64,000 bases of DNA, taken from Convolutriloba macropyga. Taxonomy: Eukaryota. The notes under the pieces were generated by a model. The model was not told where the DNA came from. It made no database searches and saw only the letters and a program-made list of their open reading frames with translations. Where the stretch lies: the NCBI RefSeq assembly GCF_964194025.1, contig NC_134473.1:51894001-51958000 (forward strand), read 5' to 3'. The translations under genes were made by a program, and so were the position numbers. Shown here one piece after another: positions 5,636 through 28,637 of this stretch; positions within the stretch are counted from its first letter, which is position 1, and each line of letters begins with the position of its first letter.

Positions 5636-5745
5636 AGGTCGACTTTATAAGGTCGACTTTATTACTCTTTTCATAAAGTCAATCCTCTCAACTAGGATTT
5701 TAAAAAGAAATAATTAGCCAGAGGAAAAAACTGTCATCCAATAAG

Positions 5746-5946
5746 CGCGTGGGGAAAACAAGGAGTGCTACTGCTGAACCCAGTTCTCACGGTCAGAAAA
5801 GGTGTACCCAATTCACATGAAGGCAAAGGGTGGGAGGAGGTCACAGCAGAAGCTATCAAAGCTGTGGATAACAAAGAGGAACCCGTTGTGTTCATGCTGT
5901 GGGGCGAGAAGGCGAAATTGATGAAGGCACTCATCAAAAATAAGAG
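5746..5946 (+). CDS. UNG: Uracil-DNA glycosylase paralog A, penultimate exon
   Basis: Translates as (S)AWGKQGVLLLNPVLTVRKGVPNSHEGKGWEEVT...[12 protein letters not shown], with the family-1 UDG motifs QGVLLLN, SHxxxGWE and VFMLWG. AG acceptor at 5744-5745. Same length (201 nt) as exon 2 of copy B. The 3' boundary assumes a GA donor. Earlier exon(s) presumably lie upstream of the window. Confidence 0.9.
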
Positions 5947-6183
5947 GAATGTTGTTAACAATCAAACCCGCTTTTGAATCCAATGAGCATGTAATATTAT
6001 CAAGCACAATTAGTTTACATTCAAGTACAGACCCCAGTGTTATAATATGTTGGGCAAAAATTGCAACTAAAATCACGTCATGCTAGCAGGAACTGGACGA
6101 ACAGCCTCAGAGCAACTTTAGCAGGGAATATACATTTAGCAGGGAAAAGTAAATGCTTGGTTGTTAACTGACACTGAATTCAG

Positions 6184-6325
6184 GCACAAAATTCTCGAGA
6201 CCTCTCATCCGTCGCCTAACTTTGGAGCAGCCCAAAAGGGCTTTCTGGGCTGCGGTCACTTCAAACAGGCCAACGATTTCTTGGCTGAAAATGGATTTGA
6301 ATCAATCTATTGGTGTTGTCTTTGA
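6184..6325 (+). CDS. UNG: Uracil-DNA glycosylase paralog A, last exon
   Basis: After a CAG acceptor: (R)HKILETSHPSPNFGAAQKGFLGCGHFKQANDFLAENGFESIYWCCL*, with HPSP and GFxGCxHFxxAN motifs. Stop TGA at 6323-6325. Not in the ORF track. Confidence 0.9.
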
Positions 6326-7090
6326 ACTATTACTTTAATATGATCTGCGCAGAGGTATCTAAATTGGGACGGTCAATATAGTCCAAGTGCGTAAATTATA
6401 CCCGCTTTTATATGTCAAGACACAGAATTTTCCTAACTGTGTGGAGCTTTAGAGATTTTCCTGCAATGGACCAATTTTTACATTAAAAGAAACTTCAGCA
6501 AAATTGACTTCTCGTTTTTTTTTTACCTGAAGAAGTACACTTTTTTGGAAATTAGTTGGGTATGATGCCACGTTTTTTCCGTCACATTAGGTTAGCGAAA
6601 TCCACAAGAGATAAACAGCCAGATCCGATTATCCGATTTAAGTACCTCTGCGTACCTATGAGGAGAGAATTCTTCGTTATTCAACACCGTCCCCCATCAG
6701 TGCAAAAAATGTATGATTTCTAATTAAAAGTCTCTGGAGCTAAATACATGAAAGAACTTTGAGGTTATTATCACTCAATTTGGCTTGACTTTATTATAGT
6801 ACTTAACTCGAACGGTGCTGCTTTAATAAAGAGCTTGTAAATTGATGCTACACAAATGCTTCGGATAATCAATGAAAGCGCTATTGTAAATGTCAACATA
6901 TTCATTCAAAATTGTAAAATATTCTTTGTTAAAGCTTTTCCACTTTTTCTAAAAGTTTAAGTGAAAGTCTCCAAATTTGTCCAGTAACAATCAAGAGTGA
7001 CTGCTCTTATCTGTTGGGAAGCTGTGATCACAACTCCTAATTCAAAATAATTATTTTAGCTCACAGGTTTAGGTGCGCGATCCTCGACCG

Positions 7091-8025
7091 CTCTGATCAG
7101 ACCATTTGGGTCGCACACTGATGGCGTGGTGCGACTCAAAATACATGGTCTAGGAGACGGTTGAGTCGCACGATGGTCTGGACAATGGTCGCACTAGGGT
7201 CTGATCAGAGGGCAAAGTCTGGGAAATGGTCTGGACAATGGTCGCACTACTGTCTGATCAGAGTGCAAAGTCTGGGAAATGGTCTGGACAATGGTTGCAC
7301 TACAGTCTGATAAGAGGACAAAGTCTGGGAAATAGTCTGAACACTGATCACACTACGTTCTGATCAATGGGCAAAGTCTGGGAAATGGTCTGGGGACACT
7401 GGTCGGACTACGGTCTGATCAGAGGGCAATGTCGCAGTATAGTCTGATCTTAGGTCGCACAAAAGTCTGGACAAGGGTCGCACTGCATTTTGATCAGAGG
7501 CCAAAGTCTGAACTCAAGTTGCCCCGAAATTTGACCACAGAGCATTAACTGCCCATATTCATTTGACTGCATCGTATTATCACCGTTTTTGATTACTCAA
7601 ATGAAAAGTTGCAGACACTTCAAAATGACTTTTTGTTTATATTTTAATCAATTAGTTTTGTCATAATCTTAACAAGATTTACTAAATTATTCAATTTTAA
7701 GTTGAGTAGTATATAGGTTTGAATTGAATAAATTAAACAAAAAAAACAACGGATTATAACATGTATAGGACAAAGTTTGGAGTACGGTCTGATCAGAGGG
7801 AGCATTGGCCGCACAAAACCGCTCGAAATTTTGGGTCGCACCAGAGTCGCACGAAATAATTGGGTCATATGACAACTTGATCAGAGGTCTTTTGGGTCGC
7901 AATAATTTTGCACAATCTCTTGGGTCGCACTACGGTCTGATCAGAGGGCGTTGGGTCGCACGATGGTCTGATAAAAGGGCAAAGTCTGGGAATTGGTATC
8001 AGAGCAGTCTAGGGTCGCGCAACTA
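7091..8025. repeat. TCTGATCAGA/GGTCGCAC satellite-like repeat (53-bp units at ~7170-7420)
   Basis: Repeated palindrome tctgatcaga. aaagtctgggaaat recurs at 7214, 7267, 7320 and 7373. Two blocks are separated by an AT-rich spacer. Confidence 0.8.
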
Positions 8026-26318: not shown

Positions 26319-26332
26319 ACCCAGGAGCGCCA
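26319..26332 (-). promoter_or_regulatory. Primer-binding site
   Basis: - strand TGGCGCTCCTGGGT, 3 nt after the 5' LTR. Complementary to a tRNA 3' end (...ACCCAGGAGCGCCA). Resembles animal tRNA-Asn ends from memory; identity not verified. Confidence 0.7.
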
Positions 26333-26335
26333 AAA

Positions 26336-26592
26336 TGATAACGCCATGATTCCGCTGGTCCGCATTGGGAAGGGTGATAGGTCGTTATCTGTCTTGAGTC
26401 TTAGCTTTAAGTTTCAATTAGTTTGGTTGCTCATGTTTTGTTTCAGGTTACACAATTCAAGCAAGAGTATCATTTCCGGTTTTACAACATTTCATCATCA
26501 TGACTTTTTTCGTTACAACTTTTCGAAACAAATCAACTTACAAAAGGCGGTAAAACACAATAAACGTAAGAAGTTAATCTCTAGCATTAACA
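26336..26592 (-). repeat. 5' LTR
   Basis: 257 bp, TG...CA termini, adjacent to the PBS. Confidence 0.95.
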
Positions 26593-27600
26593 GGGTTAAT
26601 GAATCATTTTTTGCGCTAAATTAACACGAGTAAACAACAGATTAAACAAAAAACACACACAACAATAAAAGAGATCTGATATTATTTGAATTGGATTAAA
26701 GTTCAAGTATTAGAAAAAGTCAACAAGAAGTGAAAAATTTATTGAAAACAAATCGTTGAATTATACTTTAGAAGAGATAAAAAAACTGTTTAGGTAACAA
26801 CTGAAATCTTTGCAAATGATTGCCGGATACTTCTTGGGAGTTTATTTGGCCTCCATTATTTTGACGCTCACCGCAAAAGATTTTTTTAAAAGTAAGCAAA
26901 ACTCAAAAACTCAAAAGCAAAACTCAAAAAGTTCGATATAAAATTTTACGATAAAACATTGTGAAAACCAAAATCCCAGAAGCTATTTTTTTGCTATTTG
27001 GCTGGAATCAATTGTGCCAACTAAAAGTTCAATGAGGTCGATCATTGAGGACACTTAAAGGCAAGACAACAAAGGAAAAAAACACGGTAAAACTCAAAAG
27101 AACCAGTTTTTCATTTTTTTCTTTTAAAACACTGCCAAGAAATACGCGTTAATATTAATTACTTTGTCATTTTAACTACTCCTGTTACTTGATTGAAACT
27201 AAAATTTCAGTTTGGCTTTACGTTCCCATTTAAAAAAAGTCGAAAGTTGAAAAATCTTGCGCACAACATAACAGGACAAGTCTTGAAGTACAATACTAAA
27301 AATTTTGAACTTCAAAATTCTTGACGCGACCAGCAATGCAGGTCAACAGTTAGATTCAAGCAGACAAACCAATTGATTTATATTAGCGAATAGATGGACA
27401 GTACTTCAGGGAAAATGTGTACAAAACGAGCTAAAACGCATTTTGCGCCCACATATTTTACGCTAAAATATCTAGTATCATTCGAGGATGCTTAATGTTT
27501 AAATTTGGTACTCTTAGCACCAACAATAGCATCAAAGGTCCACAAGCCGTATCATAATTAATTTTGAACAAATAAATGCGTTCCCCAGAATGAAGTAAAA

Positions 27601-27648
27601 GAAGAAGAAGAAGAAGAAGAAGAAGAAGAAGAAGAAGATGAAGAAGAA
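27601..27648. repeat. (GAA)n microsatellite
   Basis: Direct reading. Confidence 0.95.
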
Positions 27649-28637
27649 CAACGAAAAAGAATAGCTGTAGGGCAATTTTCTTAGATTACTTATCGTCACT
27701 TTTGTTACCATTTGCAGCCCTTCGTTAGTTCGCTTTGTTGTCTGGATCCTGTATGTTATAAACTGGTAATCCTCAACCTGTATTAATAAACCTGGTTACG
27801 AAAGATAAAGCGCTCTGCTTAAAAAAATTTCTGTCTTTTCTCTTTTTGCGATCGTAAGCAGCAAACACGACACAAGATCATTTTGACGCCAGGTTCATCC
27901 TGGTCTAGACAAATGAACAAAAACGACGTTAGAAATTTTTGGAATTTTTGGTTTTCCCCGTAAAAAATGGTCGGTATGTTCGGTTTGTTCGGTATTTTCG
28001 GTTTCAAGTGTAAGAAGAGGTCTGCATATTCTGGTCTGGCACGTTAAAAAATTTCGATATTTCGGTTTCATAGATTCGGTATGTTCAGTTTGAAATGCAC
28101 AAAACCATTAGTTTTGCACAAAATGCACAAAACCTATAAATGGACTGCAAATGTAGATTCAGAACTGATTTTCCGAGTTGATATGGGAATTTAAGGATTC
28201 AGCGCTGATTTGTCCTGGGACTAGTGTCCGGGTAAATCATTTCTCATTTTAAACCGAAAGTCTTGACGGTTCCTTACTTTTGAAACCAAACATACCGAAT
28301 CTAAAAAATCGAAGATACCGATAATTTCCTGCATTAATTTTTCTGGACTTTCTGCGCTTTTTCTGGATTAGAGAAGCTAAAGTCCTATGGAACTCTACAA
28401 TATAATTTTCTCCCCTATAGCACACATAATGAGTCTTTGACTTATTATTACAAACCGATGTAAAAAGACCCAATGCAAAAATACCCAATTTGACAGAACA
28501 CCCAAATTATACCCAATATTTTGCCGTTCTGAAAAGACTACCAGAACGAATGTTTAGCTTAATGTCATCTAACTGAGATAATTTAGAGCATAATAAGGTA
28601 TATATGCTGATTGTTAACGTAATCGTGCACAAAACAG

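What the first reader, a model, noticed from the sequence alone, without database searches (positions are those of the whole stretch)
5720..28637. Intron-end RNA clamp: each UNG intron's 5' end is complementary to a site just upstream of its acceptor
Seen in sequence. (1) UNG-B intron 2 (12627-28637, 16,011 nt): gttaacaatca (12634-12644) is a perfect reverse complement of tgattgttaac (28608-28618), which ends 19 nt before the exon. (2) UNG-A intron 2 (5947-6183, 237 nt): gttaacaatcaa (5954-5965) pairs with ttggttgttaac (6157-6168); the one substitution within the shared arm leaves a G:U pair; it ends 15 nt before the exon. (3) UNG-B intron 1 (10425-12425) uses an unrelated sequence: gttatttcct (10425-10434) versus aggaaacaac (12398-12407), 9/10 paired, ending 18 nt before the exon. 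(4) The UNG-A intron 1 acceptor has agaggaaaaaac (5720-5731), 11/12 complementary to the paralogous donor gttatttcctct, ending 14 nt before the exon. None of the four acceptors has a clear polypyrimidine tract (catccaataag, actgaattcag, cattttgaag, cacaaaacag). The first 20 nt of intron 2 are identical between paralogs although the adjoining exon differs at 21 of 68 residues. Inference: splice sites are paired by an intron-specific stem at a fixed distance from the acceptor, which could let introns with weak sites tolerate many kilobases of transposon insertion. Established parallels: end-pairing in euglenid nonconventional introns and in Giardia trans-spliced introns. I do not know of this as a general rule in animal spliceosomal introns.
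Basis: partly seen in the sequence, partly recalled or inferred. Interest (0 to 1): 0.9.

Follow-up and report, generated by a model that had tools for sequence, protein, structure and literature searches.

The report
Paired-end GA-AG intron in acoel UNG
In two neighbouring DNA-repair (uracil-DNA glycosylase) genes of the acoel worm Convolutriloba macropyga, one intron starts with GA instead of GT and carries a short conserved sequence near its start that can pair with a branch-site-like sequence near its end. The pairing is real and modestly above chance, but it has not been shown to drive splicing.

Summary
The window comes from Convolutriloba macropyga (acoel) and holds two tandem UNG paralogs. 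Every quoted sequence and coordinate is correct.

**Intron 2**
- It can only be GA-AG, or an equivalent shifted non-GT pair, if the RefSeq protein is to be made.
- Its first 20 nt and an 18-nt block containing TTGTTAAC near the acceptor are kept in all four gene copies, although the A and B types differ by dS about 1.1 and the intron interior no longer aligns.
- The two blocks form an 11-12 bp stem, with p about 0.005-0.03 against random pairs.

**Intron 1 (GT-AG)**
- It is weaker. The stem is 13/14 in copy B', 12/14 in the window's B, and only 7 + 4 bp in A (not significant).

**Limits**
- GTTAAC is a palindrome, and UGUUAAC looks like a U2 branch site.
- There is no compensatory double change and no RNA evidence; the available runs were DNA.
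- RefSeq does not splice the 12-16 kb B-type intron at GA-AG, and B' is a pseudogene, so "tolerates transposons" is unsupported.
- A genome-wide rule could not be tested.

The scan has already noted, and in part followed up, hairpin-ended non-GT introns on other DNA of this genome.

**Verdict:** a plausible, older member of that class; the function of the stem is unproven.

The parts
5720..5731 (+). UNG-A intron 1, 3' arm (AGAGGAAAAAAC); the intron ends at 5745
   Evidence: It pairs with its own donor (L001:10351-10363, GTTTAATTCCTCT) as 7 bp, a 2x1 loop and 4 bp; -10.7 kcal/mol, p=0.15.
5746..5946 (+). UNG-A exon 2
   Evidence: Exact match to RefSeq protein P0003.
5947..6183 (+). UNG-A intron 2, 237 nt, GA-AG
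   Evidence: P0003 can only be produced with termini GA-AG, AG-TC, GG-CA or AA-GG; there is no GT-AG option within 12 nt. The MFE and centroid folds are closed by the terminal stem.
5954..5965 (+). Intron 2 5' arm in UNG-A (GTTAACAATCAA), inside a 20-nt block identical in all four copies
6157..6168 (+). Intron 2 3' arm in UNG-A (TTGGTTGTTAAC). It contains the branch-site-like TGTTAAC and ends 15 nt before the exon.
6184..6325 (+). UNG-A exon 3 with stop codon
6355..10116 (+). UNG-B 'intron 0' of RefSeq model P0001 (GT-AG); no end pairing, used as an internal control
   Evidence: p=0.19; p=0.86. Its AG acceptor is created by TCG>TAG at 10114-10116.
10425..12425 (+). UNG-B intron 1, 2001 nt, GT-AG. 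The 5' arm is 10425-10438 and the 3' arm is 12394-12407.
   Evidence: 12/14 inverted repeat here (p=0.034) and 13/14 in copy B' (p=0.004).
12426..12626 (+). UNG-B exon 2
12627..28637 (+). UNG-B intron 2, 16,011 nt, GA-AG by homology. The 5' arm is 12634-12644 and the 3' arm is 28608-28618.
   Evidence: 11/11; p=0.005. It is not spliced at these sites in any RefSeq model.
17147..26592 (-). BEL/Pao LTR retrotransposon inside UNG-B intron 2 (257-nt LTRs, 99% identical)
   Evidence: repeat family D9; Peptidase_A17, RVT_1, DUF1759, DUF5641.
28638..28779 (+). UNG-B exon 3 with stop codon

Best explanation
UNG intron 2 is a non-canonical GA-AG spliceosomal intron. Its weak 5' end is accompanied by a conserved 20-nt element (+1..+20). 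Bases +8..+19 of that element pair with a conserved element 15-19 nt upstream of the acceptor, which also carries a U2-type branch-site-like heptamer (UGUUAAC).

The most likely reading is that this 11-12 bp stem is a maintained RNA feature. It would bring the poorly recognisable donor next to the branch/acceptor region, so that cross-intron pairing needs less help from U1 and U2AF. It would then have to be opened for U2 to bind.

Intron 1 (GT-AG, with a poor U1 match: GTTATT / GTTTAA) has the same layout: a pyrimidine-rich 5' end and a purine-rich complement ending in AAC 14-18 nt before the acceptor. The layout is decaying in some copies.

The inverted repeats may descend from the ends of a small DNA transposon, as reported for other non-GT introns of this genome, but nothing at this locus shows that.

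Shown here: the sequences, the GA-AG requirement, conservation of both arms, and a modest statistical excess. Inferred: that the stem forms in vivo and aids splicing, and its origin.
For: - GA-AG is the only natural way to make P0003 and P0121.
- The arms are identical in A/A' and B/B' and nearly identical between the A and B types, although dS is about 1.09 and the intron interior is unalignable. Similarity is confined to the first ~20 nt and the last ~20-45 nt of each intron.
- Stem statistics: intron 2 p=0.005-0.03, B' intron 1 p=0.004.
- TTGTTAAC occurs 8 times on both strands of the 64 kb window, and 6 of those are at the intron-2 ends.
- The stem closes the 237-nt intron in both the MFE and the centroid fold.
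- The one A-vs-B difference inside the intron-2 stem is A/G opposite U, which preserves the pair.
- The control intron 0, a recently created junction, has no pairing.
- Leads not checked by me: scan notes and follow-ups on other DNA of this genome describe many GA/GG/GC-AG introns with paired ends, some with RNA support.
Against: - Only two independent introns carry the signal, and the p-values are modest.
- GTTAAC is palindromic and the 5' block contains the 10-nt palindrome TTGTTAACAA. Beyond a shared 8-mer, only 3-4 further pairs are independent evidence.
- The 3' arm may be conserved simply as a branch site. A stem over the branch site would compete with U2.
- There is no compensatory double substitution. 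One G>T change in the window's B intron 1 breaks a pair without compensation.
- A 45-nt identical run in exon 1 shows that gene conversion, or another homogenising force, acts between the paralogs.
- The whole-intron fold is no more stable than shuffled sequence (z=+0.5).
- There is no RNA evidence: the four runs laid on the region were DNA.
- For the 16-kb B intron, the two arms are transcribed many minutes apart.
Confidence: 0.45

Rival explanations
1. The complementarity is a by-product of two separately constrained signals. The 3' block is simply the branch site (UGUUAAC can pair with U2 GUAGUA through two wobbles). The 5' block is an extended donor or intronic enhancer needed by a GA donor. 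The two look complementary because both contain the palindrome GTTAAC. On this reading pairing has no role.
For: - TTGTTAAC is shared as a direct repeat by both ends, and the 5' block is itself a 10-nt palindrome.
- The 3' arms lie 14-19 nt from the acceptor, where a branch site is expected, and both end in AAC.
- There is no compensatory change.
- A stem over the branch site should hinder U2.
Against: - It does not explain why a branch-site-like 8-mer sits at +6..+13 of the intron.
- It does not explain the 3-4 extra pairs beyond the shared 8-mer.
- It does not explain why intron 1, with an unrelated sequence, shows the same layout (13/14 in B', p=0.004).
Confidence: 0.25
2. The arms are decaying relics of terminal inverted repeats of a small DNA transposon that created or invaded these introns. 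They have no present function. Their identity among copies reflects recent duplication (A/A', B/B') and gene conversion (A/B).
For: - Follow-ups elsewhere in this genome report transposon-born non-GT introns with inverted ends (not checked by me).
- Neither acoel intron sits at the mammalian position; the offsets are 17 nt and 5 nt.
- A 45-nt identical exon run suggests conversion.
- The arms are weakening in A intron 1 and in the window's B intron 1.
Against: - No other copy of intron 2 exists in about 155 kb of accessible DNA.
- The arms are not terminal: the 5' arm of intron 2 starts at +8, and the 3' arms end 14-19 nt inside the intron.
- The flanking direct repeats are only AG or AGG.
- Four separate conserved patches lie exactly at the intron ends against an unalignable interior at dS about 1.1, which is hard to get from conversion alone.
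Confidence: 0.18
3. Chance: short AT-rich complementarities picked out after the fact from flexible search windows.
For: - A_i1 and B_i1 are not significant by duplex energy (p=0.15 and 0.32).
- The paralogs are not independent samples.
Against: - Intron 2 gives p=0.005-0.03 in two different statistics, and B' intron 1 gives p=0.004.
- Both arms coincide with the only conserved intron blocks.
- The rare 8-mer is concentrated at the intron-2 ends.
Confidence: 0.12

Closest known systems
[quoted passage not shown] 2019)
   Same: An animal, with non-canonical termini, complementary intron ends, and probably removal by the major spliceosome.
   Different: In Fritillaria the termini are mostly AG/AC or AG/AT, the repeats are truly terminal, and the elements belong to repeated families. 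Here the acceptor stays AG, the donor is GA, the arms are subterminal (+8; -15 to -19), and no repeated family was found.
Amoebophrya introner elements (11-30% of non-canonical introns carry 8-20 nt inverted repeats between the 5' and 3' ends plus 3-5 nt direct repeats; PMC7789003)
   Same: The arm length (11-14 nt) and the hairpin that brings the ends together are similar, and the donors are non-canonical.
   Different: Amoebophrya is a dinoflagellate with highly variable termini at both ends and repeated families. Here AG is retained and the direct repeats are only AG(G).
Euglenid nonconventional and 'intermediate' introns (PMC4770533, PMC6221363)
   Same: A stem that juxtaposes the intron ends. 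The intermediate type keeps one canonical border, as here (AG).
   Different: The euglenid core pairs are +4..+6 with -8..-6 and the removal mechanism is unknown. Here the pairing is +1/+8..+14/+19 with -14..-31, and a branch-site-like motif is present.
Teleost structured introns with (AC)n near the donor and (GT)n near the acceptor, spliced without U2AF2 (PMC4691745)
   Same: Animal spliceosomal introns in which end-to-end RNA pairing is proposed, and there tested, to replace pyrimidine-tract/U2AF recognition. The acceptors here also lack pyrimidine tracts.
   Different: The teleost arms are simple repeats shared by many introns and the termini are canonical. Here each intron has its own unique arms and one has a GA donor.
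Yeast 5' splice site-branch point 'zipper' stems in long introns (from my own knowledge: Goguel and Rosbash 1993; Libri et al. 1995)
   Same: An intron-specific stem that shortens the effective donor-to-branch distance.
   Different: The yeast stems lie downstream of a canonical donor and upstream of the branch site, leaving both free. Here the 3' arm overlaps the likely branch site.
G[A/C/G]-AG non-canonical U2-type introns of Oikopleura dioica (from my own knowledge: Denoeud et al. 2010)
   Same: A GA donor with an AG acceptor in an animal.
   Different: To my knowledge no end pairing has been reported for Oikopleura.

Membership tests
Non-canonical GN-AG U2-type intron | Donor dinucleotide other than GT/GC, with an AG acceptor, at a junction required by the mature coding sequence | tested here: met
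   P0003 and P0121 can only be produced with GA-AG or shifted non-GT equivalents. The junction restores the conserved ...KR|H..HPSP motif.
Non-canonical GN-AG U2-type intron | Junction observed in RNA | tested here: inconclusive
   The four runs laid on 5650-11600 had uniform depth and no splice joints, so they were DNA. Only the RefSeq models imply splicing.
Transposon-born intron (introner) with terminal inverted repeats | The intron is a copy of a repeated element family | tested here: inconclusive
   blastn of intron 2 against the window plus L001, L003 and L004 found only the paralogous introns. The rest of the genome could not be searched.
Transposon-born intron (introner) with terminal inverted repeats | The inverted repeats sit at the very ends of the inserted element/intron, flanked by a target-site duplication | tested here: not met
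   The 3' arms end 14-19 nt inside the intron, the intron-2 5' arm starts at +8, and the flanking direct repeats are only AG or AGG.
Transposon-born intron (introner) with terminal inverted repeats | The intron is absent at that position in related lineages | tested here: inconclusive
   The mammalian UNG introns are 17 nt and 5 nt away, not at the same sites. No other acoel UNG gene could be retrieved.
Euglenid nonconventional intron | Variable non-canonical borders at both ends, with core pairing of +4..+6 and -8..-6 | tested here: not met
   AG is retained at all acceptors and the pairing lies at other positions (PMC4770533).
U12-type (minor spliceosome) intron | 5' splice site RTATCCTT and branch site TCCTTAAC 10-20 nt from the acceptor | tested here: not met
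   The donors are GAATGTTG and GTTATTTC / GTTTAATT. TTGTTAAC matches the U12 branch consensus in 6 of 8 positions, but the donor does not match at all.
Structure-dependent spliceosomal intron (teleost AC/GT type) | Complementary simple repeats at the two ends; splicing shown to depend on the structure | tested here: not met
   The arms are unique sequences, not simple repeats. Dependence on structure is not testable with these tools.

The most novel reading that the evidence does not exclude
Convolutriloba macropyga uses intron-specific end-to-end RNA stems as a regular part of splice-site pairing for a whole class of weak-donor and G[A/G/C]-AG introns. This would include old introns in housekeeping genes such as UNG, where both arms have been held by selection across a duplication with dS above 1. 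That would make it an animal counterpart of euglenid 'intermediate' introns rather than mere transposon scars.
Probability: 0.3. Interest if true: 0.8.

Novelty: new variant of a known kind. Interest (0 to 1): 0.5.

Why it matters
If the stems are functional, an early-branching bilaterian would be using RNA structure to define introns whose donors the standard U1 rule cannot read. That bears on how non-GT introns arise and persist in animals, and on how such genomes should be annotated. RefSeq here mis-models the B-type genes by forcing GT-AG. The UNG case adds something the young transposon-born examples cannot: the same arms kept in paralogs that diverged long ago. As it stands, it is one modestly supported example without RNA evidence.

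Tried and rejected
1. RNA evidence. The look-up of sequencing runs returned four runs, and read laying showed uniform depth over intergenic DNA with no splice joints, so they are DNA runs.
2. Orthologues for covariation.
   - Two full-length UNG searches found no other acoel UNG among the best 120 hits.
   - A search with the exon-2 read-through ORF found nothing.
3. More introns from this genome for a true-versus-permuted test.
   - The window is almost all transposons: a LINE at 29.9-32.7 kb, a BEL/Pao element and tandem duplications.
   - The EF-hand neighbour shows only its first exon.
   - A representative search with that exon gave ORF fragments and foreign proteins, not the RefSeq protein.
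   - Its ENA contig turned out to be a 7.4-kb paralogous fragment without further exons.
   - The ENA 335-kb contig starts just upstream of UNG-A.
4. Bacterial origin of the UNG genes, which would have made all the introns new. The tree places them, weakly, with eukaryotic UNGs, so I rejected this.
5. A canonical GT donor at +5 or +8 of intron 2. No in-frame AG acceptor exists for it (read directly).
6. A U12-type reading. The donor does not fit.
7. Rfam scan of the window and two loci: no hit.
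Full report
**Where this is**

A search with the UNG-B protein returned three RefSeq proteins of Convolutriloba macropyga (Acoela) on a 75.7-Mb chromosome. Their sequences and the locus fetched with UNG-A (L001 = window + 14,086) fix the gene models.
- UNG-A (P0003, 230 aa): exon 1 lies upstream of the window (L001:10001-10350), exon 2 is at 5746-5946 and exon 3 at 6184-6325.
- UNG-B: exons at 10117-10424, 12426-12626 and 28638-28779. RefSeq adds a 15-nt first exon at 6340-6354.
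- A second, inverted copy of the whole pair lies about 350 kb away (A' = P0121 in L003; B' = P0126/P0002/P0125 in L004).

**The observation**

All four quoted complementarities are at the stated coordinates: 11/11, 11/12 with the twelfth a G.U pair, 9/10 and 11/12. The first 20 bases of intron 2 are identical in A and B. None of the acceptors has a convincing pyrimidine tract.

Enumerating every junction within 12 nt shows that P0003 and P0121 can only be produced if intron 2 has termini GA-AG, or the shifted equivalents AG-TC, GG-CA or AA-GG. No GT-AG solution exists. Intron 1 is GT-AG with a poor U1 match (GTTATT in B, GTTTAA in A).

**Is it more than chance?**

I used two statistics.

| Intron | RNAduplex energy, +1..+25 vs -45..-7 | p vs 6000 random pairs | Inverted-repeat score, first 45 vs last 45 nt, p |
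|---|---|---|---|
| A intron 2 | -17.7 kcal/mol | 0.006 | 0.02 |
| B intron 2 | -14.5 | 0.03 | 0.005 |
| A intron 1 | -10.7 | 0.15 | 0.22 |
| B intron 1 | -8.5 | 0.32 | 0.034 |
| B' intron 1 | -14.9 | 0.02 | 0.004 |
| B intron 0 | -10.0 | 0.19 | 0.86 |

- The 8-mer TTGTTAAC occurs eight times on both strands of the window, and six of those are at the intron-2 ends.
- Folding the 237-nt A intron 2 puts the terminal stem in both the MFE and the centroid structure, although the intron as a whole is no more stable than shuffled sequence (z=+0.5).

Intron 2 is clearly above chance. Intron 1 is above chance only in the B-type copies. Because the paralogs are not independent, this amounts to two independent introns with a signal and one without.

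The UNG-A intron-1 donor is GTTTAATTCCTCT. With 5720-5731 it forms a perfect 7-bp core (TTCCTCT:AGAGGAA), a 2x1 internal loop and four further pairs. This is a partial hit, not significant on its own. It is also not an independent test, because the A and B donors are homologous.

**Conservation**

The A and B types differ by dS about 1.09, with 64% amino-acid identity and 33 of 55 four-fold sites identical. Alignment of the intron ends shows similarity only in the first ~20 nt and the last ~20-45 nt of each intron. The interiors do not align. These conserved patches coincide with the arms.

This argues for constraint on the intron ends beyond a normal 6-nt donor. A 45-nt identical run in exon 1, however, shows that some homogenising process, probably gene conversion, acts between the paralogs, so the argument is not airtight.

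The copies differ within the arms as follows:
- One A/G difference opposite a U in the intron-2 stem, which preserves the pair.
- One G>T change in the window's B intron 1. It breaks a pair that A, A' and B' keep, and it is not compensated.
- There is no compensatory double substitution.

**Confounders**

GTTAAC is a palindrome, and the 5' block contains the 10-nt palindrome TTGTTAACAA. A shared direct 8-mer therefore automatically gives 10 of the 11-12 pairs, and only 3-4 further pairs are independent.

UGUUAAC can pair with the U2 branch-recognition sequence GUAGUA through two wobble pairs, with the usual bulged A (my own reasoning). It lies 15-19 nt from the acceptor, so the 3' block may be conserved simply as a branch site.

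Both 3' arms end in AAC and both 5' arms begin with GTT. In intron 1 the GT of that GTT is the donor itself. This would put the donor next to the likely branch adenosine, an attractive but untested geometry. A stem over the branch site would have to be opened for U2.

**The transposon-tolerance inference**

No RefSeq model splices the 12-16 kb B-type intron 2 at GA-AG:
- P0001 reads through into the intron.
- P0126 and P0002 use a cryptic GT inside exon 2 and cryptic AGs inside exon 3, which removes the catalytic HPSP region.
- B' has a premature stop in exon 2 (VFML*). The window's B has TCG>TAG at 10114-10116, which is both a stop in the B'-type N-terminus and the AG acceptor of RefSeq's intron 0.

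Nothing here shows that the clamp lets an intron tolerate a 9.4-kb BEL/Pao insertion. If anything, the bloated copies look poorly spliced or decaying. I could not get RNA evidence, because the four available runs were DNA.

**Origin**

In a marsupial UNG gene the nearest introns lie 17 nt (QG|V) and 5 nt (DR|KR) from the acoel positions (DLS|AW and KR|H), so they are close but not identical. The acoel UNGs group, weakly, with eukaryotic UNGs, so there is no sign of bacterial transfer.

Intron 2 has no other copy in about 155 kb of accessible DNA. Its arms are subterminal rather than terminal, and the flanking direct repeats are only AG or AGG. A transposon origin is therefore neither shown nor excluded at this locus.

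**Context from the scan (leads I did not check)**

Many first-stage notes on other DNA of this genome describe GA/GG/GC-AG introns with paired ends. Three follow-ups conclude that some are transposon-born, and two of those report exact removal in RNA. UNG intron 2 fits that class as an older, position-stable member.

**Literature**

I found no paper on non-canonical introns in acoels. Known parallels are:
- Fritillaria introners.
- Amoebophrya introners with 8-20 nt inverted repeats.
- Euglenid nonconventional and intermediate introns.
- Teleost AC/GT-repeat introns that splice without U2AF2.

**Verdict**

My best reading (confidence 0.45) is a maintained end-to-end stem that assists a GA donor. 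The rivals are:
- a by-product of the branch site and the palindrome (0.25);
- functionless transposon relics plus gene conversion (0.18);
- chance (0.12).

The genome-wide test that would decide the general claim could not be run with the look-ups available. I could not reach any other multi-exon gene of this genome.

Noticed in passing
L003:10001-16574 and L004:10001-24769 (same chromosome, about 350 kb away, inverted): The whole UNG-A/UNG-B pair exists as a second, inverted segmental duplicate (A', B'). A and A' differ at pS 0.026 and pN 0.017, which suggests relaxed constraint. B and B' differ at pS 0.037 and pN 0.002.
   Followed up: partly
L004, about 12506 (B' exon 2): B' has an in-frame premature stop (VFML*GGY), so it is a pseudogene in the canonical reading. 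RefSeq isoforms X1 and X2 skip the region through cryptic GT..AG sites inside exons 2 and 3.
   Followed up: yes
window 10114-10116: TCG in B' is TAG in the window's UNG-B. This one change makes a stop in the B'-type N-terminus and also creates the AG acceptor that RefSeq model P0001 joins to a 15-nt exon (6340-6354) starting 15 nt after the UNG-A stop codon.
   Followed up: yes
L001:10190-10240 vs window 10270-10320 (exon 1 of A and B): A 45-nt run is perfectly identical between paralogs that otherwise have dS about 1.1. It covers GQDPYPNEGEAHGLSFS, in which the usual His after GQDPY is Pro. Gene conversion or strong nucleotide-level constraint are possible causes.
   Followed up: partly
window 17147-26592 (-): A young BEL/Pao LTR retrotransposon (257-nt LTRs, 99% identical; Peptidase_A17, RVT_1, DUF1759, DUF5641) sits inside UNG-B intron 2. 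It carries three internal tandem arrays at 23583-25833 with periods of 24, 43 and 112 nt.
   Followed up: partly
window 1-5742 and 38318-46000: There are two large tandem duplications, with units of 2.87 kb (inside UNG-A intron 1, 96-99% identical) and 3.83 kb (88-98% identical).
   Followed up: no
window 29897-32704 (+): A degraded LINE with endonuclease and reverse-transcriptase domains, split by frameshifts.
   Followed up: partly
window 7043-8037 and 10426-10823: Contig word depth is hundreds to thousands of times that of the flanks in all four DNA runs, so these are high-copy repeats. The second lies just inside UNG-B intron 1, next to the donor.
   Followed up: no
L001:1193-1303 (-): The neighbouring EF-hand gene (RefSeq product 176 aa) has a strong canonical donor (G|GTAAGT), so not all introns in this region have weak donors.
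   Followed up: partly
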